64,000 nucleotides of DNA from Bispira polyomma. Its lineage: Eukaryota. The translations under genes were made by a program, and so were the position numbers. Position 1 is the first letter of the stretch. Every line of letters starts with the position of its first letter. Shown one piece after another: positions 1 through 56,224 of the stretch. The stretch spans positions 26,846,001-26,910,000 of the forward strand of contig OZ287751.1 of NCBI GenBank assembly GCA_965649765.1. The letters run 5' to 3'. A model generated the notes under the pieces. The model searched no databases. It saw only the letters and a list, made by a program, of their open reading frames with translations, and had not been told where the DNA came from.

Positions 1-533
1 GAAACAAACCCGAAGAAGAAAATGTTAACAACGTATCGATAATCATCTTTTGTAAATGTACAAGTATTTAGATTGGCATTCATTAAGATTAAGCAAATTA
101 TCTCCCAAACAACCCCAAAGAAGAAAATGTATGAAACATATCGATAATCATCTTTTGTAAATGTACAAGTGTTTAGATTGGCATTATTACGATTTAGCAC
201 ATTATCTCTCATGATAAGCAGAAGCTGGATATTTTGAATGTTAACAATGTCATAACTTTTGCAGTCGGTAGGAACTTTTCTGAGAATATCACAGAAATTC
301 ACATGATCAAAGGGAATTTTATAAGGATACAACAGATATAAAAGAGATCTTGATGCTTCAGATTTACTATCAGTCATAGTCAGTTTTCCACATAACCAAA
401 AATACGGTTTCCACTCTCTAAGAGACACTTTATGAATTTGAAAAATATTTTATGTAACTGAGCTTCCACAGGGATGTCATCAAATATTAAAGGCAGGTAC
501 TGGGAATGTGTTGGAAAATGCAAACCAATAAAC
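1..533 (-). mobile_element. 3' part of a non-LTR retrotransposon (L2/CR1-group-like ORF2 C-terminus), running off the window edge
   Basis: Near-identical to 48679-49319. The minus-strand translation THSQYLPLIFDDIPVEAQLHKIFFKFIK resembles the post-RT C-terminal region of L2/Crack-like LINEs. Contains 2 copies of a 105-bp repeat. Confidence 0.6.
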
Positions 534-1381
534 TGGAGTGTGGTTATTACGTTGAAGGACTCCCTCCTAAACTTCAGGAAGGAATGTTCTGGCAGTTTCC
601 CAGCCTCCATGGCTAACCAGTTCAAAAAAGCTCCTCGTGGTCCTTCAGCTTGGGGTTTCTTGGCCTCCTTCAGGATTCTTGTTATTGTCTCTTCCATCCT
701 CTCAATCGCAAAATTAAATACTGAACTGTCACTCCTGGATAGGGTAGAGGATTCGAAGGCTGTTGAAGTTTTGGATGAAGCCACATTGAGGGATGACTCC
801 ATCTCACCCTGATATGTATCAGAGTGAGACACCCCTGGTGTTGGACATTTACAAGGAGCAGCCCCCTGAGAAGCTGATGCGATAGGCTTGAAGCCGGCAG
901 ACTTGTTAAGCTGGCACTTTATATGCGGCTTAAGGAAGTCGAAGCTGGTCTTCACCCACTGCTGTCACTCGGTCAACTCGATGGCAGCTTACCCAGACTA
1001 GCCCATACTCAGCTTGCCAAAGATAGTCCTCTAGGTATGGAACCACTTCATAACTTCTGTCTTATCTAATCCAGTGGCCGTGCAGTACTCCTTCCACAGC
1101 ATGTTTTTCTTCTGAGTGTCTTTATACTGTGAATCGTGCTTATTGTAGAGCCACTCACAATTCTTCAGGAAGTCCACTACAGCCTCCTCCTGCTTATCAG
1201 CTAACAACACAGTCCTTATTTTCCCCTTCTTGTGTTTGCGACTGGGGTCGGCCGCCACCTCCCTGTCCAGTGTATCCTGTGTTTCCCAAATATCCTGGGT
1301 ATCGTGGCTCTGGGAAAAAAGTTCTGGGGTGTCACTCTCTATCTCGGACTGTTGAGTTTCTGTTACCCCTGTTATAATCAT
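534..1381 (-). pseudogene. Harbinger accessory MADF (Myb/SANT-like) protein with BESS-like C-terminus, disrupted
   Basis: AVVDFLKNCEWLYNKHDSQYKDTQKKNMLWKEY...EVMKWFHT* matches the MADF pattern, with a stop at 1031-1033. The downstream fragment PRGAFLNWLAMEAGKLPEHSFLKFRRESFNVI is BESS-like. Confidence 0.7.
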
Positions 1382-19368: not shown

Positions 19369-19642
19369 AACCACGACCTAAACTGTTAATAATGTAAAAC
19401 CCAAATAAATTCAAATTCCAGGGTTTCTGTTGGTCATAGGAGGTTTAGCGTGCACCAGTTAAGTACCATTTTAAAATTTCCGTTTCGCGATTTGTAAAAT
19501 TCTTACTGGTACCTCGAGTTATGGCGAAAAACATTACATATTTTGATTAGTTACAGTTCTTTTTATCATATTTACTTTGTCTGTCTTATAGGGCTTTTCT
19601 TGCCATTTATCACCTAGCTGTTTAACCTTCTGTTATTATCGC

Positions 19643-19980
19643 CCACATTTCCCGTTTTACGCATTCGTTTTTCTTCTGCTATTTTCGCATTTCCTTTTCT
19701 TCTATGTGACTTTGTTCCCATATTTTTATACTACAAGTGTTTTTACATAGAATAGACTACATCTTTTATTTTGATTCTGTCTAGCTGTGATTTATATTTG
19801 GTTCTTTTTGTTGCCACATTCCCCGTTTTACGCATTCGTTTTTTTCTGCTATTTTCGCATTTCCTTTTCTTTTATGTGACTTTGTTCACATATTTTTATA
19901 CTACAAGTGTTTTTACATAGAATAGACTACATCTTTTATTTTATTCTGTCTAGCTGTGATTTATATTTGGTTCTTTTTCT
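19643..19980 (+). repeat. Tandem duplication of ~171 bp in the L2 5' region
   Basis: CCACATT(T/C)CCCGTTTTACGCATTCG... starts at both 19643 and 19814; the copies are near-identical. Confidence 0.9.
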
Positions 19981-20231
19981 TGCTACTGCTCCTTCACCTC
20001 TGAGATGTGGAAGTTCTGTTTAACACTTCTCCCGTGTATGATTCTGGCCGGTGTCAGATTACATAAATGGAGCACCTGCTCTCCATCCAATACACCTTTT
20101 TTCGACCAATTTGCACTTGATCCATCTCTACTAGCCTCCCTGGATAAGGTGAACACTTCTTTTTTAGCCAAATTCAAATTCACATTACCCGCCGTCCAAA
20201 CCCCAGGGTTAACAGTATTTGGATCCCTCTG

Positions 20232-23070
20232 TTGACTGCGCTATGCGGGGACGTCAGCATTAATTCGGGCCCCCCAGCATCCTTGCTTAAGATCGGTGCA
20301 TTTAATGCCCGTTCCCTGCGGAATAAGGCACCTGCGGCTATCGACTTAGTCATAGCCCAGGACCTGGATGTTGCTGCCGTCTCCGAGACGTGGCTCAGCA
20401 GTAGGGATACAACATCCTTTTTATCGGATATTACTCCTCCGGGCTACAAATTTCATCAGTTCCCCAGGTTGCACAAACGCGGGGGAGGAGTTGGCATTTT
20501 TGTGAAAAATACCCTTTCCTGTGAAATTCTAAAAAACCAGTCCTACTCGTCTTTCGAACACATTTCATGCAAAATTTCAAATGGCTATCATTCATTCCTA
20601 GTTTCCTCCTTTTACAGACCACCCATCCCTTCTTTAACTAGTTTTACTCAAGAGTTTTCCGAATTCCTTGAGACCCTTAACCTTCTCCCATTTGAAGCTA
20701 TCATCCTTGGTGATTTCAACATCAAGCTCGACATAGAAAATACTACGACAAAAGATTTTAACACCCTCCTCGACACTTTTGGGTTCTCACAGTTTATCTC
20801 TACTTCAACCCACATCCACAATCACATACTCGATCTGGTAATCGCAAGACCAAATTCAAATCTCATCAGAGAATCATGGGTAACTGATGGGATTTCAGAT
20901 CACCTAGCAACCTTCGCCTATTTAAATTTACCAATACCTGCCTCACATAAACCTCGTGTCATAAAATATAGAAACATCAGAAAAATTAATATAAGCAAAT
21001 TCAGAGACGATATCCTGGAAACTAATCTCATCAAACATCCATGCAAAAATGCTGAAAGCCTTAGCTTACAATACAATCACTGCCTTTCTACTGTCCTTGA
21101 TAAACATGCGCCATGGGTATCAAAAACCCTTCCCCAACTAACAACCATGAATGGACCAATGCCGCCATTACAGAAGCCAAAAGATGCAAACGCCAACTTG
21201 AGCGTCAATGGCGACGCACAAAATCCTCCTTAGACATAAGCCATTACTGTATCGCCACAAATAATTACAACAGGCTAATAACTGATGCCAAAAAACAACA
21301 CTACGACTCCATCATCACCGAAAATCAGGATAATCCCAAAAGGTTACATCGAACATCAGAGAAGGTTCTCCCCATAAACCACTATCTTACTTTTTAGCAG
21401 AAAAATTTGGAAAATTTTTTATAGAAAAAATCAGCAACATTCGTGACGCCTTCCCAACGATACATCACTTCAATCCTCCATCCCCAGGATATAAGGTTTG
21501 TAACCTGTTTCATTTTAGTACACTGTCTGAGCTTGAAGTTCTGAAACTCATCAAATCCTCTACTATTAAATCTTGTAACTTAGATCCCATCCCAGCAGTT
21601 ATTCTGAGTCAATGTCTTGACATTCTTGTCACACCCATAATAAATATATTAAATTTTTCTCTTCGGGATGGTGTCTTTCCCACCTGTTTCAAGACGGCAA
21701 ATGTAACTCCCTTGATTAAAAAACAAGGGCTTGATAAAAACCATCTCAAAAACTACAGACCGGTGTCAAACCTTAGCTTCATCTCAAAAGTCATTGAGAA
21801 AGCTGTGGCTAAACAAATTTCTGACCACCTTAATGGACAAAACATCGCCACCAGTCTGCTTATAGAAAATTTCACTCTACAGAAAGTGCCCTTTTTTCCA
21901 TCAGCAATGATGTCAATCTTGCACTGGACCGCAACGACACAGTGGCCCTCACCCTTCTGGATCTCTCAGCTGCATTCGACACTACTGATCATGTCCTGCT
22001 CTGCGACACTCTCAAGCAGTGGTTCGGTATAAATGGCAGTGTCCTTAAATGGATCAGATCCTACCTTACTCTTAGGGCACATTTAAAGAATTAAACTAGA
22101 TGATCACCTATCATCTTCCATAAAACTTCCATATGGAGTACCCCAGGGATCCGTCCTTGGTCCTCTACTTTTCACCCTTTATACACATCCTCTCAGCACT
22201 GTCATCAATAAACACAATATAAAACACCACATGTATGCAGACGACACTCAAGTCTATTTCTCCCTCAATCCACAAAACGCAGATACTAACATAGACCTAC
22301 TTGCAGACTGTTTGTCTGATGTCCAGGCGTGGATGAACTACTCCAAACTAAAGCTTAACCCTGACAAAACAGAATTCATCCTCATAGGAAACAAGAAAAA
22401 CAGTAAACTCCGAAAATCTTTGTTTCCCATCTCCCTGCTGGGAAAAGACATACTACCTTCCGAAAATGTTAAAAACCTGGGTGTCACTTTTGATTCAGCT
22501 TTTTCGTTCGATACTCATGTTGCCAACATCTGTCGCTCCTGCTATTACCACATACGCGACATCAAAAGAATCAGAAACCACTTGTCCATGGACACAGCGA
22601 TAATTGTGGCAAATGCCCTTGTAAGTAGCCGCCTCGACTACTGCAATTCTCTCTTGTATGAAGCAAATAAGTCAAACATTAAAAAGCTCCAGTCCATCCA
22701 AAACTACCTATGTAGGGTCATTTTTCGCCTGGGTTGTCGCACAGACGTTACTCCTTACCTCAAAAAATTACACTGGTTGCCCATTAAATCTCGAATTTTG
22801 TTTAAAATTCACGTTACCACTTTTAAGGCTGTAATCACTCAACAGCCACCCTACCTTGCCTCCCTTCTTTCTTTTAGTAACCGCAAGAGAGGCAACAGAC
22901 TCTCTGTCACTTCTGTCAGACCAATCAGAAAGGTGGGTTTCAGAGCGTTCTCCACCGCAGCTCCACGGTTATGGAACAGTCTCCCAGTTGACCTCAGATC
23001 AGTTGACACACTTATCGGTTTTAGGAAAAAGCTTAAAACCTATCTTTTTAATCTTGCCTACCCACCTTAG
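20232..23070 (+). pseudogene. L2 ORF2 (endonuclease-reverse transcriptase), broken by several frameshifts/deletions
   Basis: ORF pieces 20232-21233, 21113-21397, 21712-22032 and 22231-23070 carry consecutive EN, linker, RT and C-terminal motifs. Confidence 0.9.
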
Positions 23071-24030
23071 CTTTCCTCGTGCACGCTCCCACTTCCTTCC
23101 TTACGACTCTGCAATTTCCATGGACTTAATGATTGGACTAATGATTCTGCTGTTGCGCTTTAGAAGATGCCTAGCATCAATAAAGCGCGTTAAAAATCTA
23201 TAATAATAATAATAATAATAAGCATCTACTATAAAACCACTAGTCTTTCACCTATAAGGAGAGAGTGTGGACATATATTCTTCAAACTTACTACTTGCCA
23301 TAGGTCAGCGTTACAGTCGATGAGTTTATGTTGGTGGTGGTGGTGGACATTATATAGAGTACTGTGATGACAGTTAGAGCTCTACAGGTTGCATGTATGT
23401 AACTACTTTTGGACCATGTACTTATGGCCCACTCACACTGGCTTGTTGTTTTAATTGCACACAAAAATGAGCAAATGGAAGGCGAAACATGAATAATAAC
23501 TTATAATGAAATTAACGTATTGAATGTATATAAATGTATGCTTGCATAAATAAAACATAAGACAAACAAAGAAAAAATTTATTATTTCGAGCTGCATGAA
23601 AATATGCTGCATTTATAGCTGTTTTTGACAATCTCCACTAAAACGGTTGCTGCGTTCGGGGAAAACATAGGACACATCTGACATGTCATTAATGCGTATA
23701 TGAACGTACAAGACGGCACTAATGTTTCGAAATGTAATAAAATGCATTAGAAAATCATATGGGACCTATCTAAAGTTGAAAACATAGTTGAAATGGCTAC
23801 CAAAACAGTTTCCCCAATTTCAGTTTGTTTATTTCTGTTTTGCTTACATTTCTAAAAATGAATTTAATTTAAGTTAAAATTTTAGTGCAAAAACACCTTA
23901 GTGTTATACTGCACTATTAAAATTAATAAATACATTAACTAAATATATACAAACAACATTAACATTAAACAAACGAAACAATGACTAGATTAGAGAATAA
24001 GATGCCAAAAATATAAAATATAACAAATAA

Positions 24031-24118
24031 ATACAAAATATAAATATAACAATACTACAAACAAGACTAGACTACAAAATATAAATATAACAATACTACA
24101 AACAAGACTAGACTATAA
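24031..24118. repeat. 41-bp tandem duplication in the LINE 3' UTR
   Basis: TACAAAATATAAATATAACAATACTACAAACAAGACTAGAC present twice. Confidence 0.85.
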
Positions 24119-24187
24119 AAAACAAAGATATCACAGACAACACAATAAATTAACTCTTATTAACAGAATAAATTATTTAACTATATC

Positions 24188-27100
24188 TTAAAACTTATAG
24201 AACAAACCTATTTCCTTTAAATAATTAAAAATACTATTTACATTGCTATTTAATAAATCTTTCATATTATTAACATTAATAAACTTTTTTTGAATGTCAT
24301 GTAGGTCGATACAGTCCAATAATATATGCCTGACTGTATCGGGACAATGACATGGAATGCACCAGGGCTTATCCTCACCTTTCAACAGATAACTATGTGT
24401 AAAATAGGTGTGTCCTATACGGGCTCGAGTAATAACTATTTCTTCCCTACGAGATAAACCTGTCCAAAAATTAAAATCTCCAACTGTAGGGTTTATTTGA
24501 AATAGTTTGTTATCAGGACACGCATTCCATTGGGCTTGCCACTTTTGTTTAAAAACACTATTTACATTAACTTTGAAGTCTGTATAGGGGACTTTCAAGT
24601 CTAAAATGTTAAAATTCAATGCTTGTTTGGCAAGCTTGTCTGCCACTTCATTGCCCTTAATACCTACATGACTAGGAACCCATGCTAAAACTACTTTTTT
24701 GTTCACTGACAAACACTGATTAAAAACCTTTAAAATATCCTGTAAATAGGGATGATCACAGTTATTGCCATCAATGGCTTTCAGACTAGATAGAGAGTCA
24801 GTGAATATAATAAACTTTAATCCCTCACAATGTCTAATAATGTTAAATGCCATTTTCAGAGCCTGCAATTCAGCTGTGAATATGCTAGCATTGCCAGGTA
24901 ATCTAACTTGGGCACTGAGGCCATTTGATGTTGCTGCTGCAGCTACTTTGTTTTTATCTTTAGAACCATCAGTATATATTGCCCTGTGATCAGAATAACA
25001 ATTGATCAACTGGCTAAAGAGACTTTGAAATAAATAATCGTCTCCTATATGTTTTTTATTTTGTGCCAAGTAGTAATCAATGTGTGGCTTTTGTATAGTC
25101 CAGGGTGGGTCTTCTGGCAATGACACAGTCTGAATTAAATCCAACCGAGGACAGACAGCAGCTAAGTCTGCCTTAATACGATGCCCAAATGATCTTATAG
25201 CTGATGGTTTATTTTCATACTTATCAATGTACTGGGGGTTATATACTACTTCATAGGTTGGATTTTGAGGGTTACTTCTCAACTTTATTGCATACTGAAC
25301 ACACAGTTTATGAAATCTCAGGTATAATGGTGGTTCATTAGCTTCTACATATAAGCTTTGCATTGGAGAAGTCCTGAAGGCTCCTAGGCATATTCTTAAG
25401 CCCTGGTTTTGAATGGGTTCCAATTTTCTCAAATAAGACTTACGGGCAGAGCTAAAAACTGCACAACCATATTCCATCCTTGATCTAACAAAAGATCGAT
25501 ACATCCTTAGTAGTACACTTCTGTCTGCACCCCAATCCATTTTTGACACTACTTTTAATAAATTCATTGCTTTGTCACATTTCTTACGCACATAGTCAAT
25601 ATGTGCTTTAAAATTCAACTTGTTATCAAGTATAATGCCAAGAAACTTTGTTTGTGTTACTACAGGTATTTGAGTGCCATATAATGTTAATGTAGGATCT
25701 AGATGGAGTTTTCTTTTGTTACAGAAGTGCATGCATACTGTTTTAGTTTTAGAAAATTTAAAACCATTTTCATCAGCCCATTTTTCAATTTTATTCAGGC
25801 ATAGCTGTAATTGTCTCTCTATAGAGGCCATATTATTTGAGCTATATGTTATTGAGAGGTCATCAACAAAGAGAGACTTTTCAAAGTTGGATGGAATAAT
25901 ATCACTTATGCTATTGATTTTTAAAACAAACAAAGTAACAGCAAGGATACTTCCTTGAGGAACACCCATTTCCTGATTTTGCATATCTGAATAAACTGAT
26001 CCTAGACGAACTTTAAAAACTCTATTGGATAAAAAATTCTGAATAAAAACAGGCATTCTACCACGAAGCCCTGCCTTATACAAATCTCTGGCAACACCAT
26101 ATTTCCAAACAGTATCATATGCTTTTTCTAAATCAAAAAATACTGAAACTACATGGTTGCCTTTTAAAAATGAATCTCTAATTAAAGATTCAAGCCGAAC
26201 TAATTGGTCTGTTGTCGTTCGACCTTTTCTAAAACCACTTTGATGTACACTTAAAATGTTGTTTTTTTCAAGAAACCAAACCAATCTTGCATTTATCATT
26301 CTTTCCATGGTCTTGCACAAGCAGCTCGTCAAAGATATGGGACGGTAATTAGACGGGTTTTGTGGGTCTTTACCAGGCTTAGGAATGGGTATAATAATTG
26401 CTTCTTTCCAGCATTCAGGGATTTCACCAGTTATCCATATTTCATTAAATATGTCTAATAGTACCACAAGTGAATCCCTTGGCAAATGTTTAAGTAATTG
26501 ATAATGTACTTCATCAGGCCCTGTGGCTGTATCATGAGACTTTTTTAATGCATCTATCAATTCTGATATATTGAACTCCATGTTATAATTTTCTTGGTTT
26601 CTTGATGCAAAATTAAGCTTTTCTTTTTCAGTCTTTTCCTGATATTTCTGAAACTTAACAGAGTAATTTTTACTGCTGGAATTTTTGCTTATTTCTTCTG
26701 CCAAGATATTTGCTATATCTCCTCTTTCTGTTATTTTACTTCCATCAGTATTTACTAGATGTCTTACTGTTGTATTATTTTGCCTCCCATTTATTTTCCT
26801 AAGCATTTCCCATACCTTTTTGGCTGAAGTATTTGTATTTAGTTTCGATATATATTCCTGCCAGGAGTTTCTTTTAGCTGCTTTAATTACACTCCGAGCC
26901 TTAGCCCTGCAGTTTCTATATTCATTTATATTTGCCGATGTTGGATTTATTCGGCATTTATCTAGGGCTTTCTGACGAGCTTTTTGGACCCTTTTACATT
27001 CATCATTAAACCATGGTTTAAAACTACCAGTGGACTGTCCTGAGGATTTAGGTATACTTTTTGTGGCTGTGTCATTCAATTTACTCATAAAAACAGGAAA

Positions 27101-27886
27101 CTTGTCATTCAAATTTTGAAATGTATGTCTATTAATTTCAAGTGAGCAATGTAGCTGATATTTTACCCAATCAGCCTTTTTAATGTTCCAACGGGGTGCA
27201 TTGTCTCTTGGTATATTTTTAACTATATCGATTAGAATTGGGAAATGATCACTACCACATTGGTCACTGTGAACTTGCCAAGTAAAGTCAAGGAATATTG
27301 AACTGGAACATAATGATAAATCTATTGCAGTTAAAGATCCTGTAGCTGGATGTAGGTATGTAGGAGAATAGTCATTGAGTAAACAAACGCCAGATGAATC
27401 TAATATATGCTCAATCTTTTCACCTCTACTATCACAGTGATTTGAACCCCACAACTCATTATGGGCATTAAAGTCACCTATTAATAAAAATGGTTGTGGC
27501 AGTTCATTGACTAGATTATCTAAGTTTTTCTGTGTAACTGTACAACTTGGTGGAATATATATACAACATATAGTTATGGTTTTGTGTAGGGATACTTTAA
27601 CTGCTACGGCTTGTAACTGTGTAGTTTAGGAGATTACTTCGTGTGGCACACCTTTTTTAACAAATAATGAGCAACCTCCAAATACTCTTCCATTAACTTC
27701 TGAAACACTAGTTTTGTAATAGTGATCAAAGCCTCTCAACTTGTAATTATCATTGTCTTTAAAATATGTTTCCTGCAAAGCTAAAATGTATGGACTAAAA
27801 TCAGAAATTAAATGTTTAATTTCTTCAAAATTTGGCTTATAGCCACGACAGTTCCACTGGATAATGTGTTTTTGGTTTGGTTTCAT
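24188..27886 (-). pseudogene. LINE ORF2 (APE endonuclease, RT, RNase H, CCHC), ~1232 codons with one in-frame TAA at 27626-27628
   Basis: ORFs 27626-27886 and 24188-27454 are in the same frame. Motifs: QWNCRG, LQET, GDFNAH, GSDHFPI, YRPISLTSC, DLEKAYD, GVPQGS, LFVDD, YTDGSK, AELQAL, TDSLS, WVPSHVGIKGNEVAD, CxxC..HILLDC. Confidence 0.93.
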
Positions 27887-27895
27887 TATTTAATT

Positions 27896-29128
27896 TTATT
27901 TACAATTTTGACTCCGGGGTCTTCCTCTATTATTTTGTGGTGGTAGGTCAACCATCATTTCATGATCATCCTCACCATCTGAGTAAAGAGTATCTTGTTT
28001 ATTATATTGTTTAATAAGATCATTTGACCCTTTTGAATTTCTATTTCTATTGAGAATTACCTTACTCTGGTTATTTGTCACTTTGACTGATTCATTTTGT
28101 GATTTGGTTGCTTCAGTTTGACATGAAGATGTAACTTTGGTTAAAACTACTTTTGAATCCTTTTCATTTGTTGCTTGTGGTAATTTTTTTGGACTTTTTA
28201 ATGTTTCTGGCCAAGTTATATCTGTCTGAGTTTCCTTGGAGCAAAGTGTCACAGATTTTGTTACTTTGGCATATGAAGTTTTTACATTATTAAATATTGA
28301 TATTTGTTTCTTGGCTTCTGTATAAGATATACCTCTTTCAGTTTTGATTTTTTGGATTTCTTTTTCTTCTTTCCATTTTGGGCAAGTTTTGTCGGTAGCT
28401 GAATGATTTCCCTCACAATTAATACACTTGGCATCATTTTCGCATTCATGTATATCTGTATGATTCTCACTACCACATTTTGGGCACACTTCTTTTCTTC
28501 TACATGTAAATTTTGTATGACCAAATTTTTGGCATCTGAAGCACCTCATTGGATTTGGAACAAACACTGACACAGGCACTCGCAAATAACCCACCCTGAT
28601 GTATTTTGGTAGAACTTGGCATGCAAAAGTCAATATGAAAGTCCCAGTACGCCTTCTTTCGCCCTCTCGAAAAATCGTTATTCGGTCCAACTTTACAACA
28701 CCCTCAGATTGTAAACCTTCTAATATTTCATCATCTGCACATTCTTTAATATCTGGACATCTTATCACTCCTTTCTTTGTATTCAAAGTATTGTGAGGGG
28801 TTACGCTGATTGGTATAGAGTAGTCCATTGTCAAGTCCAATTTTGTTGTTTTCAAAAGTTTGTCACTTTGCTTTTCTTTATCAACCTCAACTAAAATATT
28901 TCCTGATCTTAGTTTTTTTATGTTGATAGGTTCAGTGCCCAAAACAGATAAAATGGCCTTATTAACAGCAAAAGGTGAAAGTTTCAGTAGTGAATTTTCT
29001 GTATCAGAACCTTGCAAAAGTAAAAATCGAGGCCAAGAACAAGCAATACCAGTTTCCAAAGTCATAAATCCTGGGTCATTCGTAGGTCGAGTCCTTTTCC
29101 TTCCATCCGTTTGATTTTGTGATGCCAT
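27896..29128 (-). CDS. LINE ORF1, gag-like nucleic-acid-binding protein (~410 aa from the ATG at 29128)
   Basis: Zinc knuckles CFRCQKFGHTKFTC, CPKCGSENH..C and CINCEGNH..C, plus KLSPF..IKKLRSG and PHNTLNTKKGVI motifs typical of I/Nimb ORF1. Intact frame. Confidence 0.9.
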   Translation of the reverse strand: MASQNQTDGRKRTRPTNDPGFMTLETGIACSWPRFLLLQGSDTENSLLKLSPFAVNKAILSVLGTEPINIKKLRSGNILVEVDKEKQSDKLLKTTKLDLTMDYSIPISVTPHNTLNTKKGVIRCPDIKECADDEILEGLQSEGVVKLDRITIFREGERRRTGTFILTFACQVLPKYIRVGYLRVPVSVFVPNPMRCFRCQKFGHTKFTCRRKEVCPKCGSENHTDIHECENDAKCINCEGNHSATDKTCPKWKEEKEIQKIKTERGISYTEAKKQISIFNNVKTSYAKVTKSVTLCSKETQTDITWPETLKSPKKLPQATNEKDSKVVLTKVTSSCQTEATKSQNESVKVTNNQSKVILNRNRNSKGSNDLIKQYNKQDTLYSDGEDDHEMMVDLPPQNNRGRPRSQNCK

Positions 29129-30150
29129 GGTTAAATAGTGAATATTCACTGCCAATGCTCTCCACCCACCCTTCGAGCCCAACAAGGGGATACCGAATTG
29201 TGTGGGGCTATGCCCAGCACACAGGTACCAGAGATACATTGGCAGTATACTCAAAGCACACTAAAAGTGAACCTCAATTGACCTGTTAAGCAGCCGCCTT
29301 CTAGATACTCCAAACAAAAGCACAAACCAGATACCAGCAGAATAAAACTAACAAAACAACGATATAAACATTCACCAACAACAAACCATCACTTAATTTG
29401 GAGCACTAGGGCTTGGCACTACCAGCCGATTGGTTAAGCCAGGCCATCTTAACCATCCGTCTAAGTGAAATTGAGGCCAAAGCTGTGTATTGCCTCCTCA
29501 ATGCCGCAACAAGGTATCGGCTCAACAACCAGGATCCTCTCTTCCACTGACACGGACCGCAACCCACGGCAAACAGGTTGCCCCCAATTAGTCGCCTCTT
29601 ACGACACGCTGGAGGATACGTTGGGCCTATTCTACTTCCCCGGACCCACAGGGGGATCTAAAAATGAAATAAACGTAAATGTAAACCCAGTGTGACCAAG
29701 CCTTAATTAAATTTTTTTCTAAAGTTAAACATGTACAACATTTAAATTGGTTCCAAACTGAATGAGAATTTCTGACAAACATGAGACTTAAGCAAGGCTA
29801 AAGAGATGGTTATATGTTCAACTGACAAAATGTGGTGTGAGATTTTGGCCCATTTACTTAGTTGATGGGCTTTGCAGTGCCATTTTCTAACAGGTTGGGG
29901 AATTGGTGGGAAATTCTCAACTCTCAAGACGACAGTATTGGCATCTTAAATAAAAACAGCTGAGGCACATTTTTTGTTTCTGTGAATATATTGGGTAATG
30001 TTTAACACTTAAAGGAATATATTTCACTCATTGCAGAGTTTTCAATACCAGAATATTTGTTGATGTGTTTGTGTTTGTAGTAGAGATTTAATGAAATTAG
30101 AAATTACCTATAATAGTTTATAATACATAGGTCACACATATCACTGTTAA

Positions 30151-32690
30151 TGGTATTGTTCCACTATCAAGACTAGTCAGGGGGATGGGCTGATTATATG
30201 ATCAGGGTCAATCGTGGGCAATTTGTCCTGATTGGTTTCAAAAAGTGTGAGAAAAAATGAGTCCAATTATATTTGTATTGTGCAAGGACCAAAGAGATAA
30301 CTCGTTAGTAAACCACAGAAGGTTAGATAAATTGATGTGATTAGACTCCAGGATCACATATTTTTGCCCCTGACCTCCCTGATTGAAAAAGATAAGTTGT
30401 TGCAGCCAGTTACGATCCAAAAAAATAAGTAGTTAGAACACCCCAACCTACTCGTACACAAAGATAACTTGGCGCCTTCAAGTGACTGATCCTAACCAAA
30501 TCCTGGGCAATCAAAATTTGGGGGCTTTGATATGCCACTACATGCTATAAAAGGGGGCAGAGAACTTGTATTCAGACAGTTATAATTGAGAAGTCAAGTA
30601 AGAAAGATGATACCAGAAGGTATTATAAATAAGAGGGGAGCAAGGCAAAGGTTCTGGGTCAAGCCATGGCTGAGGGGAGGGAATGATATGAACACTACAC
30701 AGCACTTATACCACTCGTGGAGTTGGAAGATGTCTAGTAGTATGACAACCTCCTCAGGATGACACCTGGTGTGTTCCTGGAGATAGAGAGGAGGGGTGGA
30801 GAACAGGGTACAGAAACAGACCACCTGGTACAGGAAGCCACTTTCCCCTGGATTCAAGATAGCTATCACTTTGAGGCATTTGGCTACTGGGGAGTCATAC
30901 ACATCACTGCAGTACTCTTTTGTAGTGGGCAGGTCAACCATCAATGTTACCCCTATACTCAAAAAGTCAAATCTAAACAGAAATAGTCTTAAAAATTACA
31001 GACCAGTGTCAAATCTAAGCTTTGTCTCTAAATTGATTAAAAAAGCCGTTGCTCTCCAAATAAATGAACCCTTACGCACCAACAATTTGGGAAAATACAC
31101 ACCAGTCAGCCTACAGAAAATACCATTCAACGGAAACAGCACTTCTAAAAATTTGCAGTGACATCAATATGATCTTGGACAGGGATGGTGTAGTTGCCCT
31201 TACTCTTCTTGATTTGTCTGCTGTGTTTGATACAATTGACCACAAGGTACTTTCTGAATGCCTAAATACTTGGTTTGTGCTATCAGACTTCAGTTCTTTA
31301 ATAGATTGAATCCTATCTGGAATGCCGTGATCAGGGTCAACAGAGCTAAGTCATCTTCTTTTAATCTCCCGTTCGGTGTCCCTCAAGGTTTGTTCCTTGG
31401 GTCCCTTCTGTTTTCACTGTAAACTACTCCCTTTGAAAATAAAATATGCTTACACCACAATATCAGCTATCACTTCTATGCAGATGACACACAGATCTAC
31501 TACTCCCTCCATCCAGGTCCTAGAACAGCTTTCTAGCTGCCTGAATTCGATTGAATCTTGGATGAGTAATTCAAAATTGAAATGAATTCCTGCTTATCTG
31601 CTTCAAACATCAAAAGAAAAAGGTCCTTGACTTCTTTCCTACTACTCTCATTGCTGACAGTGCGAAGAACCTAAGAGTCACTTTTGACTGACTTCTCCTT
31701 CAAAAAACATGTCTCCAATATCTGTCGTTCCGGCTACTGCAACATCTTTGACTTTCTTAGGATTCAACGGCATTTAACTCTAGAAAATGCCATTGCAGTG
31801 GCAAATGACCTGGTATAAAGTCGGCTAGATTACTGCAACTCACTACTATATGGAATTGGACAGGGCTAAATATACAAGCTACAGAAATTAAAACGACCTG
31901 TGCGGAATAGTAAGCCATGCTGGCCCTCGCACTCACACACATCCCCCCTCCTTAAACAATTACATTGGCTACCTATTGAGTTCTGTGTTTAATTTAAGGT
32001 AATTATCCTTATTTTTACGACAGTTCATGTACATCAACATGCCTACTTATCATCTATGCTGTCTCTTAGCAATCTAACAAGATGTAATCATCTCTCCACC
32101 TCAGGTTTCTTACCCAAAAAATCAGCTGGTTCAAAATCATTTTTAGAGTAGCACCTGCTGAGTGGAACAGCCTCCCTACTAGTCTTCGGATTGAGACAAG
32201 CATCACAGGTTTCAGAAAAAAGCTCAAAACACATCTGTATCAGCTCGCTTTGCCAACCTAGCATTCATCTGCTGGTCAGGACTGAACTCTGATCACCAAC
32301 CATTTTCTGTCTACCAGTCTGTTTGCACACTGATTAGGATATGCGCCACAGAGGATGCCTGGTCATCGATTGTGGCACTATAAAACTAAAAACATCAACA
32401 AGTTTGTGCAGAAGGTTTGACAGGCCATCATAGATAAGTACCAGGAAGAATTTCTCATATGCCCTACCACCCCTGAGGACTGGAAGAAGGTTAAGCCTGT
32501 CTTTAGAAATACGTGTAATGTTCCAAATTTTTAGAGGGCCATAGACGGCAAGCACATTGCTATTAGATGCCTGTGAAAAGGTGGGAGCGAGTACATCAAC
32601 TACAAGGGATTCACTCGATCGTCATACTTGTCCTAGTAGACATGGATTACTGTTTCCTATGGGTCAACTTCGGTTCAAGAGAACAGTTCA
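30151..32690 (+). mobile_element. PIF/Harbinger transposon (left end plus decayed DDE transposase) interrupted by an L2 insertion
   Basis: Terminus TAA|TGGTATTGTTCCACTATCAAGACTAG. RFWVKPWL and PLSPGFKIAITLRHLATGESYTSLQYSF..GRSTI precede the insertion; INKFV..CPTTPEDWKKV..AIDGKHIAI..YINYKG follow it. Confidence 0.85.
30945..32392 (+). mobile_element. 5'-truncated L2 LINE inserted in the Harbinger transposase
   Basis: NYRPVSNLSFVSK, STETALL, LLDLSA.FDT, FYADD and WNSLP motifs, with a 3' stem-loop. Flanking CATCAA at 30939-30944 and 32393-32398. Confidence 0.88.
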
Positions 32691-39163: not shown

Positions 39164-40867
39164 ATGATGTCCATCATTTTATGTGCAGTTATTATTTCGT
39201 TGGCATTAGCAGAAGAGGGATTGCATCCATCGTTCCAGCGCAATGTGAGACCATCATACGAAAGCTTTCTTTTGGGAAAACGTGGGATGCCACGTGATGA
39301 AAGTTCTTATATGGGATTTCTTCTTGGGAAAATTAAGAGGGAGAATCCCAAATACTACGACTTCCTGATGGCAGAAGGTACTGTGAAGCGAGCAGATCTC
39401 AGCGACTTTATGGTGGGGATGAAGAGGCAGCCACTTGGGTACATGGATTTTGTCATGGGGGCAAAGAGAAACGGTTACACAGACATGCTGGACGTCAAGA
39501 GGGATGCATACACAGACTTCCTGACTGGAAGTAAAAGACCATATGACTTTGATCATTTCGTTCTTGGGAAGCGTATGCAGAATTACAAGGATTTTGTACT
39601 GGGAAAGCGGCGTGTTAGGAGAGCTGTGCCTAAAGGTACTGATGACGGTCTACACGGTCAGTTCGTGCTGGGAAAAAAGTCGAAAGGTCCACAGGACTTT
39701 GATAACTTTGTCTTGGGAAAGAAAAGTTCCCCCAAAGAAGGCTATGACGGATTTGTGTTGGGGAAAAAAAGTTCCCCTCAGGAAGGGTTTGATAATTTTG
39801 TACCGGGAAAGAAAAGGTCTCCACAAGGGGAATATGATAAGTTTGTACTAGGAAAAAAAAGTTCCCCAGAAGGCGAGTATGACAATTTTGTACTTGGAAA
39901 GAAAAGGTCTCCTGAAGGGGTGAATGATAATTTTGTACTGGGAAAGAAAAGGTCTCCAGAAGGGGAGTATGATAATTTTGTACTGGGTAAGAAAAGAAGT
40001 GGTTATGATAATTTTGTTTTAGGAAAGAAAAGTTCCCCAGAGGGAGGGTTTAATGGGTTTGTCTTAGGTAAAAAGAGTATCCCAGAGGAAGGTTTTGATA
40101 AGTTTGTTTTGGGTAAAAAGAATGCCCCAGACGGAGAGTTTAATAAGTTTGTCTTAGGTAAAAAGGATGCCCCAGAAGGAGGGTTTAATGGGTTTGTTTT
40201 AGGTAAAAAAGGTACCCCAGAGGAAGGTTTTGATAAGTTTGTTTTAGGTAAAAAGAATTCCCTAGAGGGAGGTTATAATGGGTTTGTTCTGGGAAAGAAA
40301 AGCGACCTTGATAAAGGGTATGATAATTTTGTTCTAGGAAAAAAAGCTTCACCAGAAGGTGCCTATGATAACTTTCTGTTAGGAAAAAAGAGTACCGACT
40401 ACGATCAATTTGTCTTTGGGAAGAGGAGTGGCTATGATGACTTTGTTTTGGGTAAAAGAGGGCATCCAAATTATGACCAGTTCTTGGCGGGTAAAAAGCA
40501 CACAGCTGGATATCGTGACTTTGTGTTGGGCAAGCGAGCAAGATTTTCACCCATGTCTGGCTTCAGCAAAAAACAGAGCCTTGGAAGTAGATATACCGAT
40601 TTCCTTGTAGGCGTCAAGAAAAGTGCCCCGAGCCCCCAAGATAAGAGATATCACAATGTTATCGAAGACTTTGTACTTGGTAAACGGGAGGCCTCAGACA
40701 ATGTGGACGACAGGCGAGAATACAAGGATACCTACACGCAGATGGGCAGAGAAGGAGGTCAAGGTCAAACAGGTGAGAAGAGATCAGCGGTCCATCAAGC
40801 AGACCAAGGCAATGAAGTCATAGATGGGAAGGCTTCAGTTAACACAGTGGATAGTTATAACCAATGA
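39164..40867 (+). CDS. Multi-copy neuropeptide precursor (FVLamide-type, 567 aa)
   Basis: ATG at 39164 with A at -3; hydrophobic signal peptide MMSIILCAVIISLALA/EE. 20 FVL-G-K(K/R) units plus FLLG, FVPG, FVFG and FLAG variants bounded by dibasic convertase sites. 1.7-kb open frame in AT-rich DNA, with synonymous variation between repeat units. Confidence 0.96.
   Translation: MMSIILCAVIISLALAEEGLHPSFQRNVRPSYESFLLGKRGMPRDESSYMGFLLGKIKRENPKYYDFLMAEGTVKRADLSDFMVGMKRQPLGYMDFVMGAKRNGYTDMLDVKRDAYTDFLTGSKRPYDFDHFVLGKRMQNYKDFVLGKRRVRRAVPKGTDDGLHGQFVLGKKSKGPQDFDNFVLGKKSSPKEGYDGFVLGKKSSPQEGFDNFVPGKKRSPQGEYDKFVLGKKSSPEGEYDNFVLGKKRSPEGVNDNFVLGKKRSPEGEYDNFVLGKKRSGYDNFVLGKKSSPEGGFNGFVLGKKSIPEEGFDKFVLGKKNAPDGEFNKFVLGKKDAPEGGFNGFVLGKKGTPEEGFDKFVLGKKNSLEGGYNGFVLGKKSDLDKGYDNFVLGKKASPEGAYDNFLLGKKSTDYDQFVFGKRSGYDDFVLGKRGHPNYDQFLAGKKHTAGYRDFVLGKRARFSPMSGFSKKQSLGSRYTDFLVGVKKSAPSPQDKRYHNVIEDFVLGKREASDNVDDRREYKDTYTQMGREGGQGQTGEKRSAVHQADQGNEVIDGKASVNTVDSYNQ
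39680..40390 (+). repeat. Coding tandem array of mostly 45-nt (15-aa) units
   Basis: About 16 units of xxP(E/Q/D)(G/E)x(Y/F)(D/N)xFVLGKK, including one short unit SGYDNFVLGKK. Confidence 0.95.
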
Positions 40868-48622: not shown

Positions 48623-49510
48623 TTTTTTTTATTTCTTGTATACATGATTCAGATTTTACACTAAAACAAAAAGAAAAGGAAACAAACCCGAAGAAGAAAA
48701 TGTTAACAACGTATCGATAATCATCTTTTGTAAATGTACAAGTATTTAGATTGGCATTCATTAAGATTAAGCAAATTATCTCCCAAACAACCCTAAAGAA
48801 GAAAATGTATGAAACGTATCGATAATCATCTTTTGTAAATGTACAAGTATTTAGATTGGCATTCATTAAGATTAAGCAAATTATCTCCCAAACAACCCCA
48901 AAGAAGAAAATGTATGAAACATATTGATAATCATCTTTTGTAAATGTACAAGTGTTTAGATTGGCATTCATTAAGATTTAGCACATTATCTCTCATGATA
49001 AGCAGAAGCTGGATATTTTGAATGTTAACAATGTCATAACTTTTGCAGTCGGTAGGAACTTTTCTGAGAATATCACAGAAATTCACATGATCAAAGGGAA
49101 TTTTATAAGGATACAACAGATATAAAAGAGATCTTGATACTTCAGATTTACTATCAGTCATAGTCAGTTTTCCACATAACCAAAAATATGGTTTCCACTC
49201 TCTAAGAGACACTTTATGAATTTGAAAAATATTTTATGTAACTGAGCTTCCACAGGGATGTCATCAAATATTAAAGGCAAGTACTGGGAATGTGTTGCAA
49301 AATGCAAACCCATAAACTAGCGAATAGACTTTCTCTTAGTTACATTCAATGTTCCACCGAACAATATAATGTCATACACTACTGTTTAACAAGGTTATAT
49401 TGTACATTAGAGTCACAGATAACTCCGGCCTATTATGCCTAAGATGTTAAGGACGAGCTGGTATTATTCATTTGTTCAGCTACAGTATCTCAAGAGTACA
49501 CTTTACCTGC
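48623..49510 (-). mobile_element. 5'-truncated LINE 3' region (longer copy of the element at 1-533), with poly(A)
   Basis: Minus-strand CDSNVQYNLVKQ*CMTLY..RKSIR*FMGLHFATHSQYLP. AATAAA followed by an A tract at ~48623-48635. Three 105-bp repeats. Confidence 0.6.
48690..48990. repeat. 105-bp tandem repeat, ~3 copies (2 copies at ~10-210)
   Basis: AAGAAAATGT...GATAATCATCTTTTGTAAATGTACAAGT(A/G)TTTAGATTGGCATT... unit. Confidence 0.9.
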
Positions 49511-53356: not shown

Positions 53357-56224
53357 TCTTTTCCCACCAGATTCCCTCACAAATACACACACAAAAATAC
53401 ATATTTTAAATACAAGCAATACATTTCACCATATTTTGTTTTTAGTTACATCTACACAAAGGGAGAGGAGGGTGGGCTCTAAAAGCTCCTCTTCCCACAA
53501 GCACTTTTTGACAACCAAGTTGGAGGACCCCACTGTAGTTTCCCGCCCTTTCTTGTGACATTTACACTCAACCAGAGAAGGTCCATTGTTGACCCTGTAG
53601 GAAAAATGGAGGGTTAAGCTTTTAATACATAAGATGGGCCAGCCACTTCGAATTGACCTCAAGTGCAAGCAACACTTATGTAATTTGTTAAATAATCTGA
53701 GAATATGCATAACCATCTCTGTTTTATATGTTTTTATTAATGGTAACAAACATGTTTTAAAATTTTTTTCTTGATAATCAATTTTATCTCTGTTAACGAT
53801 AGTATTCATTGATGTGCAATTTAATAGTTATATTTTTATAGTTGTATGTATAGTAATATGTAGATGAAATTAGCTTGTGAACTTAAATTCATGTTTACCT
53901 TAAAAGGTCATACTTAAGGTAACCTTACCTCATGCAATTAAGGTAACCCTAACTTGAAAATATCTTGAAACCTAAACTTAGTTAAAGGTAACCTTAACTT
54001 ATGTAATTAAAATCTTTACCAAAGGTAAACTTAAATTATGGTGGCCTTAACTCTTAAGGTCACCTTAACTTAATTAAAGGTAGCTTTAACTTATGTAATT
54101 AAATTATTTATTAAAGGTAAACTTATTTTATGGTGGCCTTAACTCTTACGGTCACCTTTTTCTTTCTTAATTGTAATTAATGTTCTAACCTAATAACTTT
54201 AGATGTTAGCTGTTAGATGTGTATGTATATAATAAATGCCCAAAGTGCTATACGCCTTGTCGTCATTATCACTTTGTTCAAATATCACTTATCACCTTAT
54301 CTGTGGACTGGTGAAATTTTAGTAAGGTAAAAGTAAATATATTTAGGTATATATATCGAATAGATATAAATAACTGATTGTACCCTTTTTAGAAGCTTTT
54401 ATTGTGAACTGTCTGAAATCACTAATAATATACTGTGGATATTCCTAAGGTCAAGGTTACACATCCCCTGACAAAAAGGGGGAAAAGGAGTAATTTTACA
54501 TGTCTATTCTTGTTACCAAAAAAATTTGATGTCCTTCCCACAAGTTATTATATTATTTCTTCTTAAAAATAGTATCTTGTTTCCACAAGAACAAGATGAT
54601 ACTGTTTGGGAACGGAATAGTATCTTGATGTAACAAGAATATATCTTGAGGAAACGAAATGCTATCTTAAGGCAACAAGATAACACACAAAGTTTCCTGT
54701 GACAATACCCCAAATCAGTCATTTCAAACTATAACTACAACCACACAAAATAGTACATATTTGTCTCACCAAAAAGCCACTTTTAAAATCCTTCCTACTT
54801 GTTAACATTTTTACACCACCACCCCACCATTATTTTTCCACCATTCTGGATGAATTGGCAAACTTGCATCCACTGTCTGATTTTATTACTAATTCTTAGG
54901 CATTTGGATCAACTTACTTTCATGTTATAATAGACATCTGTGGATTGCCAATGGAGTTTTTTCTCCCACTGAACTACTCATTATTTGATCCAGATGTATT
55001 GATGGAGGAAATGACAGGAAATTACTATATTGCAGGTCTTTTCACACATAATTACGATATGCACCTATGTGGCATTGATTAAGCCCCTTTACTTCAAGAA
55101 TAGACATGTAAAATTACTCCTTTTCCCCCTTTTTGTCAGGGGATGTGTAACCTTGACCTTAGGAATATCCACAGTATATTATTAGTGAGTTCGGACAGTT
55201 CACAATAAAAGCTTCTAAAAAGGGTACAATCAGTTATATATATCTATTCGATATATATACCTAAATATATTTACTTTTACCTTACTAAAATTTCACCTGT
55301 CCACAGATAAGGTGATAAGTGATATTTGAACAAAGTGATAATGACGACAAGGCGTATAGCACTTTGGGCATTTATTATATACATACACATCTAACAGCTA
55401 ACATCTAAAGTTATTATTAAGAAAGAAAAAGGTGACCGTAAGAGTTAAGGCCACCATAAAATAAGTTTATCTTTAATAAATAATTTAATTACATAAGTTA
55501 AAGCTACCTTTAATTAAGTTAAGGTGACCTTAAGAGTTAAGGCCACCATAATTTAAGTTTACCTTTGGTAAAGATTTTAATTACATAAGTTAAGGTTACC
55601 TTTAACTAAGTTTAGGTTTCAAGGTATTTTCAAGTTAGGGTTACCTTAATTGCATGAGGTAAGGTTACCTTAAGTATGACCTTGTAAGGTAAACATGAAG
55701 TTAAGTTCACAAGCTAATTTCATCTACATATTACTATACATACAACTATAAAAATATAACTATTAAATTGCACATCAATAAATACTATCGTTAACAGAGA
55801 TAAAATTGATAAAGAAAATTCTTTTAAAACATGTTTGTTACCATTAATAAAAACATAAAATAGAGATGGTTATGCATATTCTTAGATTATTTAACAAATT
55901 ACATAAGTGTTGCTTGCACTTGAGGTCAATTCGAAGTGGCTGGCCCATCTTATGTATTAAAAGCTTAACCCTCCATTTTTCCTACAGGGTCAACAATGGA
56001 CCTTCTCTGGTTGAGTGTAAGTGTTACAAGAAAGGGCGGGAAACTACAGTGGGGTCCTCCAACTTAGTTGTCAAAAGTGCTTGTGGGAAGAGGAACTTTT
56101 AGAGCCCACCCTCCTCTCCCTTTGTGTAGGTGTAACTAAAAGTAAAATATGTTGAAATGTATTGCTTGTATTTAAAATATGTATTTTTGTGTGTGTATTT
56201 GTGAGGGAATCTGGTGGGAAAAGA
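53357..56224. repeat. Long inverted repeat: arms 53357-54512 and 55095-56224, 582-bp spacer
   Basis: The arms are near-identical reverse complements with scattered substitutions and small indels. Mirrored ORFs 53426-53809 (-) and 55866-56102 (+) confirm the symmetry. Confidence 0.95.

What the first reader, a model, noticed from the sequence alone, without database searches (positions are those of the whole stretch)
39164..40867. Candidate undescribed neuropeptide signalling system: an FVLamide precursor with ~25 amidated peptides
Seen: a signal peptide, then 20 peptides ending FVL-G-K(K/R) (e.g. SPEGEYDNFVLa, SGYDDFVLa, PYDFDHFVLa) plus FLLa, FVPa, FVFa and FLAa variants; consensus (Y/F)-(D/N)-x-F-V-L-NH2; coding region uninterrupted. 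Established: a G-dibasic pattern gives C-terminally amidated peptides via prohormone convertase, carboxypeptidase E and PAM. The motif is not that of FMRFamide, PXFVamide/MIP, FVRIamide, buccalin/allatostatin-A (FGLa) or EFLamide/TRH (different register). The closest I recall, unverified, is Platynereis FVMamide (..DYSKFVMa); one unit here is YMDFVMG. Inference: a new family or a divergent FVMamide ortholog outside its known range, with an unidentified receptor.
Basis: partly seen in the sequence, partly recalled or inferred. Interest (0 to 1): 0.88.

Follow-up and report, generated by a model that had tools for sequence, protein, structure and literature searches.

The report
Known worm neuropeptide gene, massively copied
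This is a real gene for a precursor that would be cut into about 25 small signalling peptides, but it is a marine worm's version of an already known annelid neuropeptide (FVMamide, also named FILamide); the odd part is that it sits in a large DNA block copied about 21 times over five chromosomes, and this is one of only two copies found unbroken.

Summary
Observation confirmed: 39164-40867 is an uninterrupted 567-aa ORF with a signal peptide and 25 Gly-dibasic peptides, 20 ending FVL. It is not an undescribed system. The genome is an annelid (Frizzled tree). The Platynereis FVMamide precursor itself carries nine FVL-G-dibasic units, FVF and FLL variants and the same layout. Urechis 'FILamide' aligns in register outside the repeats, so FILamide is probably the same family. 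Of ten other copies read, nine are broken; only this copy and its upstream neighbour are intact. Copies differ by 1-3% and the broken ones decay almost neutrally, so amplification looks like passenger duplication. Two intact copies out of 21 could be chance, so which is the working gene is not shown. No expression data were obtained. The scan found the same thing earlier on another, broken copy in this genome (s1-656003).

The parts
39164..40867 (+). Single-exon coding region of an FVMamide/FILamide-family neuropeptide precursor, 567 aa
   Evidence: homologues; the Paralvinella homologue is also encoded in one piece
39164..39211 (+). Predicted signal peptide, aa 1-16
   Evidence: hydrophobicity and A-L-A ending, (by inspection)
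39212..39610 (+). N-terminal variable peptide region: 3 amidated peptides plus extended, non-amidated units (F-x-x-G-x-K-R type) as in Platynereis FVMamide
39611..39622 (+). Furin-type site R-V-R-R (aa 150-153), the only R-x-[KR]-R in the protein, just before the main repeat block; an equivalent site lies there in Platynereis, Urechis, Paralvinella and two unnamed homologues
39623..40390 (+). Homogenised repeat block: 17 peptides ending F-V/L-x-G-K-K(-R), 45-bp DNA period (TRF array 39700-40393, 15.6 copies)
40391..40687 (+). C-terminal group of shorter amidated peptides (5) and non-amidated spacers
40688..40867 (+). Acidic C-terminal tail without amidation signals, and stop codon
533..49318 (.). 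One unit of a head-to-tail tandem duplication that contains the gene; 39.5 kb in the upstream copy, 48.8 kb here because of insertions; junction at 532/533 has a 2-bp microhomology and recurs in clusters on C4, C6, C9 and C12
49319..64000 (.). Right flank of the larger duplicated block, shared with copies on C4 (27.07 Mb), C9 (46.97), C10 (40.57) and C12 (18.82-18.87); the block's right end lies at or beyond the window end
19439..23229 (+). Broken L2/CR1-type LINE (endonuclease and reverse transcriptase pieces) inserted in this copy of the unit, absent from the upstream copy
23869..29656 (-). Young LINE with endonuclease, reverse transcriptase and RNase H (ORF 24191-27625) and a 454-aa ORF1, inserted 9.5 kb upstream of the start codon; 97-98% identical copies genome-wide

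Best explanation
The ORF is this annelid's FVMamide-family (FVMa/FILa) neuropeptide gene, in which repeat homogenisation has made FVL rather than FVM the main ending. Shown: sequence anatomy, annelid host, family match. From established pathway knowledge: the signal peptide sends it into the secretory route, a furin-type cut at R-V-R-R separates the N-terminal part from the main block, prohormone convertases cut at KK/KR, carboxypeptidase E trims and PAM turns the terminal Gly into an amide, giving about 25 peptides of consensus (Y/F)-x-x-F-V-L-NH2. Inferred from relatives: made in apical-organ and brain neurosecretory cells and acting, most likely through a still unidentified rhodopsin-type GPCR, on ciliomotor and settlement circuits (faster ciliary beat, fewer arrests). 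The gene rode as a passenger in a segmental block that was duplicated in tandem and then dispersed in a fairly recent burst; the extra copies are decaying. This full-length copy on C4 is the most likely working gene. Family identity about 0.95; this copy being the (or a) working gene about 0.75.
For: Platynereis FVMamide precursor: nine FVL-G-dibasic units, FVF and FLL units, G-S-K-R extended units, R-K-R-R before the G-K-K block; one unit differs from aa 139-149 here at one of eleven residues; its amidated peptides were detected by mass spectrometry (supplement 9). Best database hits are Paralvinella LSH36_597g01021 (E 2e-80) and Urechis FILamide QUP52035.1 (E 6e-19); the Urechis protein aligns in register in the non-repeat N-terminus, including the unusual F-x-L-G-K-I-K-[RK] unit and the furin site. 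Motif test: 82-100% of amidated units of Paralvinella, Urechis and three unnamed homologues (P0123, P0148, P0167) fit [YF]-x-x-F-[VLIFT]-x, three other unnamed ones 46-67%, against 0-15% for other repetitive precursors hit by the same search. Annelid host. Function of relatives: PMC7017327 and PMC5130983, PMC7737342. Duplication; copies 1.0-3.3% apart, nearly star-shaped tree; dN/dS 0.82 in broken copies against 0.44 in the two intact ones. This copy is full length, close to the majority sequence (18 codon changes), and on C4 the block's left edge runs on unbroken through a Harbinger-like remnant while three other copies stop there, as expected of the source locus.
Against: The dN/dS difference is not significant (Fisher p = 0.086) and 5 of 20 amino-acid changes in the intact copies hit core motif residues, the share expected by chance (150 of 567 positions). 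With about 2.7 lesions per broken copy, 1.4 of 20 neutral copies would still be intact by chance. The Platynereis sequence was compared by eye from the paper's supplement, not by a scored alignment. Repeat-driven E-values are unreliable: an unrelated MHF-amide precursor ranks second.
Confidence: 0.72

Rival explanations
1. Same family, but this particular copy is a silent duplicate that has not yet been hit by a stop or frameshift; the working gene is the upstream copy (C4:26836907, 492 aa, two in-frame deletions of whole repeat units) or a locus not scored by the search.
For: Neutral model gives P(at least 2 intact of 21) = 0.42; this copy carries private changes in core motif residues (L214P, L418F) and two LINE insertions 9.5-20 kb upstream, where a 5' exon or promoter could lie; only 77 of 267 candidates were scored.
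Against: It keeps all repeat units, has fewer amino-acid changes (11) than any full-length broken copy (14-21), and dN/dS 0.45; the upstream copy also has core changes, including loss of one amidation glycine. No better intact copy appeared.
Confidence: 0.2
2. A new neuropeptide family separate from FVMamide.
For: No paper in the searchable main texts uses the word FVLamide; FVL is the main ending here, FVM in Platynereis; no Pfam family; a targeted search did not return the Platynereis protein itself.
Against: Platynereis FVMamide holds nine FVL units and the same architecture; the last two residues vary freely across homologues (FLM, FIL, FVM, FIA, FVT); the host is an annelid.
Confidence: 0.03
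3. The amplification was selected for dose, for instance to supply peptide for an exocrine use (pheromone, tube or mucus secretion), or the C12 mini-gene satellite is expressed.
For: About 21 copies plus at least 67 N-terminal fragments on C12, many in a 168-codon open frame that joins aa 1-121 to aa 402-439.
Against: 19 of 21 copies are broken; dN/dS near 0.8 in broken copies; some stops are shared between copies, so broken copies were themselves duplicated; tens of kilobases of non-coding, transposon-rich flank were copied along; satellite units have only about 130 bp between frames.
Confidence: 0.05

Closest known systems
Platynereis dumerilii FVMamide precursor (GenBank JF811328 and the N-terminal mRNA1; PMC3890597)
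   Same: Signal peptide; variable N-terminal units with extended non-amidated forms; furin-type site; homogenised G-K-K block; later G-K-R units; Y-x-x-F-V-(M/L)-amide motif; contains FVL, FVF and FLL units.
   Different: Main block ends FVM there and FVL here; spacers here are mostly S-P-E-G-type; no report of a multi-copy locus in Platynereis was found (copy number there not tested).
Urechis unicinctus FILamide precursor (QUP52035.1; PMC7737342)
   Same: Aligns in register from the N-terminus, shared F-x-L-G-K-I-K unit, Y-x-D-F-V-M-G unit, furin site, G-K-K block with FIL, FVL and FLL endings.
   Different: 336 aa with 7-8 peptides; published as Urechis-specific, while that paper lists no FVMa for Urechis, so it is most likely the unrecognised FVMa orthologue (inference).
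Paralvinella palmiformis hypothetical protein LSH36_597g01021
   Same: Best hit (E 2e-80); single coding exon; 26 amidated units, 96% fit the motif; furin sites before the block.
   Different: 732 aa, main ending FLM; unannotated; no conserved flanking DNA with this locus.
Crinoid precursors with F/L-M-L/M-amide repeats (Anneissia japonica XP_033111019; SALMFamide-type by my recollection) and MHF-amide or FGL-amide precursors
   Same: Repetitive G-dibasic precursors hit by the same HMMER search.
   Different: Do not fit the Y/F-x-x-F register (0-15% of units); similarity comes from repeat spacing.

Membership tests
Annelid FVMamide (FVMa/FILa) proneuropeptide family | N-terminal signal peptide, no other protein domain | tested here: met
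   Hydrophobic aa 1-15, A-L-A ending; no Pfam hit above its cut-off. SignalP itself not run.
Annelid FVMamide (FVMa/FILa) proneuropeptide family | Many peptides of form (Y/F)-x-x-F-(V/L/I)-(M/L)-G followed by K-K or K-R | tested here: met
   22 of 25 amidated units fit the [YF]-x-x-F register; Platynereis units.
Annelid FVMamide (FVMa/FILa) proneuropeptide family | Layout: variable N-terminal units, furin-type R-x-[KR]-R site, homogenised repeat block | tested here: met
Annelid FVMamide (FVMa/FILa) proneuropeptide family | Found in annelids only | tested here: met
   Frizzled-9/10 of this genome falls in a clade with Capitella and Paralvinella, 100/98, apart from molluscs, brachiopods and a nemertean (one gene, Owenia falls outside that clade).
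Annelid FVMamide (FVMa/FILa) proneuropeptide family | Scored sequence match to the type member from Platynereis | tested here: inconclusive
Annelid FVMamide (FVMa/FILa) proneuropeptide family | Neuronal expression and amidated peptides in tissue | not testable with these tools
Annelid FVMamide (FVMa/FILa) proneuropeptide family | Conserved gene neighbourhood | tested here: inconclusive
   No called neighbour within 10 kb in Paralvinella; no host gene recognised in the duplicated block.
FVamide/EFLGamide (fulicin/TRH-type), PXFVamide, FVRIamide, allatostatin A | Family-specific endings (F-V-amide, E-F-L-G-amide, P-x-F-V-amide, F-V-R-I-amide, F-G-L-amide) | tested here: not met
   None of the 25 units has these endings.
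Giant cargo-carrying transposon (as cause of the amplification) | Defined ends with terminal repeats and target-site duplication, own transposase | tested here: inconclusive
   A left edge at C4:26801171 is shared by three other copies but lies inside a decayed Harbinger-like element; no matching inverted end was found within the 264 kb held; no long transposase ORF other than nested LINEs and a tyrosine recombinase insertion; right end and flanks of other copies could not be fetched.

The most novel reading that the evidence does not exclude
The block of at least 79-109 kb that carries the neuropeptide gene is not an ordinary segmental duplication but moved as one giant mobile unit (for example Harbinger-driven macro-transposition or a circular intermediate), scattering a whole neuropeptide locus over five chromosomes and spawning a 100-kb satellite of in-frame mini-precursors, some of which could be expressed.
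Probability: 0.1. Interest if true: 0.6.

Novelty: new member of a known kind. Interest (0 to 1): 0.28.

Why it matters
As a peptide system it adds one more annelid member to a known family and joins two names (Platynereis FVMamide, Urechis FILamide) into one family whose constant part is (Y/F)-x-x-F-hydrophobic-hydrophobic-amide; that is useful for finding the receptor, which appears to be still unknown. The copy-number history is the unusual part: neuropeptide genes are normally single-copy (own knowledge), and here one has been copied about 21 times with almost all copies dying, which offers a dated natural experiment on dosage constraint and on how repeat units are gained and lost in steps of 45 bp. 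It also warns that annotation, primers and RNA mapping for this gene will be confounded by pseudogenes.

Tried and rejected
Pfam: only sub-threshold noise for the precursor. Paper search for FVLamide: none, but the term stands in a supplement. Conzelmann 2011 and Bauknecht 2015 are not held, so FVMa physiology is cited from papers that summarise it and the receptor status rests on memory. The first selection test (p = 0.002) was discarded because BLAST had aligned the upstream copy's repeat units out of register; the gap-aware repeat gives p = 0.086. Assembly artefact (haplotype copies) rejected: about 21 copies on five chromosomes, each with its own lesions and insertions, and the tandem junction recurs on four chromosomes. 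Retrocopies rejected: tens of kilobases of flank on both sides are shared. Whole-genome duplication rejected as the cause: the Frizzled search shows no such doubling and the copies are clustered. No conserved non-coding DNA with the Paralvinella or P0123 loci. No structure prediction was run, as such precursors are unstructured.

Full report
Observation. The stretch 39164-40867 on the + strand is one open frame of 567 codons and a stop. It begins with a hydrophobic stretch ending in A-L-A, has 25 segments that end in glycine before a basic pair (20 FVL, 2 FLL, 1 FVP, 1 FVF, 1 FLA), four or five related units with an extra residue after the glycine, one furin-type site (aa 150-153) and an acidic tail. 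The central part is a 45-bp tandem array. The motif count is 25 against 0.024 expected from shuffles.

Host. The genome has 1.04 Gb in 75 contigs. Its Frizzled-9/10 protein has Paralvinella, Pecten and Capitella as best named hits, and in a maximum-likelihood tree it falls in a clade with Capitella and Paralvinella (support 100/98), apart from molluscs, brachiopods and a nemertean. The host is therefore an annelid; this rests on one gene and I did not identify the species.

Family. The only hit of the whole protein in the 90% database is an unannotated 732-aa Paralvinella precursor with FLM-amide repeats. The exhaustive search adds a set of shorter precursors, one of which is the named Urechis FILamide, QUP52035.1. 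That protein aligns in register with ours in the non-repeat N-terminal part, including an unusual F-x-L-G-K-I-K unit, a Y-x-D-F-V-M-G unit and the furin site. The supplement of Conzelmann et al. 2013 (PMC3890597) gives the Platynereis FVMamide precursor: it holds nine FVL-G-dibasic units, one FVF and FLL units, extended G-S-K-R units near the N-terminus and an R-K-R-R site before a G-K-K repeat block, and several of its peptides are labelled FVLamide there. One of its units matches aa 139-149 of our protein at ten of eleven residues. The paper classes FVMa as annelid-specific and lists amidated FVM peptides found by mass spectrometry. A motif test separates these relatives (46-100% of units in the Y/F-x-x-F register; 96% for Paralvinella, 100% for Urechis) from other repetitive precursors that HMMER also hits (0-15%). 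The last two residues vary between species (FVM, FVL, FLM, FIL, FIA, FVT), as expected when repeats are homogenised within each lineage. I file the gene as a new member of the FVMamide family and suggest that Urechis FILamide belongs there too.

How it most likely works. Processing by signal peptidase, a furin-type cut, prohormone convertases, carboxypeptidase E and PAM follows from established knowledge of the pathway and gives about 25 amidated peptides of 8 to 17 residues (the first one needs a further cut at a single arginine). In Platynereis larvae FVMa raises ciliary beat frequency, reduces arrests and drives upward swimming (PMC7017327, PMC5130983), and its transcript is seen in 3-day larvae (PMC5747525). 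Urechis FILamide is expressed in apical-organ cells and peaks in competent larvae (PMC7737342). A like role here is inference. I know of no identified receptor; the screen paper could not be read.

The protein matches 161 places in its own genome. DNA on both sides of the gene is shared at 93-98% identity. Counting places with the coding region and adjacent flank gives about 21 copies in nine clusters: C4 26.83-26.89 Mb (2) and 27.08-27.13 (2), C6 79.2 (2) and 81.96-82.05 (4), C9 16.93 (1) and 47.01 (1), C10 40.6 (3) and 48.5 (1), C12 18.81-19.05 (5). This is my hand count and a lower bound. On C4 the gene lies in a head-to-tail unit, window 533-49318, whose upstream twin spans 39.5 kb and lacks two LINE insertions present here. 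The junction shows a 2-bp microhomology and the same break point appears on C6, C9, C12 and in the second C4 cluster, so the tandem formed once and was then copied. The unit's flanks were copied too: the left flank to C9 47.05, C10 48.46 and C10 40.72, the right flank to C4 27.07, C9 46.97, C10 40.57 and C12 18.8. The C9 47.0 copy has one unit between both flanks (at least 79 kb), C4 has two (at least 109 kb) and C10 40.6 has three. The shared left edge is at C4:26801171, inside a decayed Harbinger-like element that continues unbroken on C4 only, which points to C4 as the source. No terminal repeats or own transposase were found, but the right end and the other copies' flanks could not be read.

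State of the copies. Ten other copies were aligned to the coding region. Nine have nonsense codons, frameshifts or insertions; the upstream neighbour (C4:26836907) is open for 492 aa with two in-frame deletions of two and three repeat units. The remaining ten copies appear broken or truncated but were not read. Copies differ by 1.0-3.3%, with a nearly star-shaped tree in which the three C10 40.6 copies group with the upstream neighbour and the two C12 copies group together. Against the majority state, dN/dS is 0.82 in broken copies and 0.44 in the two intact ones, which is not significant (p = 0.086). Broken copies carry about 2.7 lesions each, so 1.4 of 20 neutral copies would be intact by chance. 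The data fit one working gene plus passengers that began to decay soon after copying; they do not prove which intact copy works. This copy is the better candidate because it is complete and lies at the probable source locus. Its FVP and FVF peptides are private substitutions.

Satellite. On C12 between 18.912 and 19.010 Mb at least 67 fragments of aa 1-121 (to 150) recur, largely at a 637-bp period, each next to a piece of aa 402-439; many lie in one 168-codon open frame. This looks like an internally deleted copy that was amplified into a satellite. It is read from coordinates only.

Limits. No step needed referral.

Earlier findings. After reaching these conclusions I found that the scan had followed up another, broken copy 217 kb away with the same reading (s1-656003). 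It agrees but is not independent evidence.

Verdict. Real gene, known family, known phylum. The claim of an undescribed signalling system is not supported. The lasting points are the merging of FVMamide and FILamide and the unusual 21-fold, mostly dead amplification of a neuropeptide locus. Interest 0.28.

Noticed in passing
G000:C12:18912000-19010500 (coordinates): About 100-kb satellite, mostly 637-bp period, built from the precursor's aa 1-121 joined to aa 402-439; many units keep a 168-codon open frame with the signal peptide. Not read.
   Followed up: partly
window 23869-29656 (-); also L021:3637-9384 and about 20 kb further right: Young LINE with endonuclease, reverse transcriptase and RNase H; three copies within 70 kb and many at 97-98% identity genome-wide; one sits at a similar position in the C12:19.06 copy of the block.
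   Followed up: partly
   Followed up: no
L019:3020-4036 (+), C4 about 26.829 Mb: 339-codon tyrosine recombinase frame (Phage_integrase, E 4e-6), probably a DIRS-like insertion private to the upstream unit.
   Followed up: partly
window 53357-54512 and 55095-56224: Inverted repeat with 1.15-kb arms at 96% identity, a foldback-type element with relatives across the genome.
   Followed up: no
window 2-208 and 48680-48992: 105-bp tandem repeat about 320 bp before the unit junction, in both units.
   Followed up: no
window 383-964 (-) and 30787-31158 (+); C4:26800900-26807500: Several decayed Harbinger-like pieces (transposase and Myb-like ORF remnants, recognised by eye); the 194-codon frame at 383-964 is a chance fusion across the tandem junction.
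   Followed up: partly
L026:2991-3452 (-) and about 5.6 kb further right: Two related exons with a weak CUB-domain match, perhaps the next host gene family about 53 kb beyond the window.
   Followed up: no
P0123, P0126, P0127, P0128, P0148, P0167: Unnamed precursors in public assemblies with FIA, FIQ/FFQ, FVM, FVT and FIT endings in the same register; probably further FVMamide-family members from unidentified animals.
   Followed up: partly
P0122, P0124, P0129, P0131: Very long (859-1638 aa) unnamed precursors with up to 51 M/L-H-F-amide and M-S/N-F-amide units; a different family, not identified.
   Followed up: no
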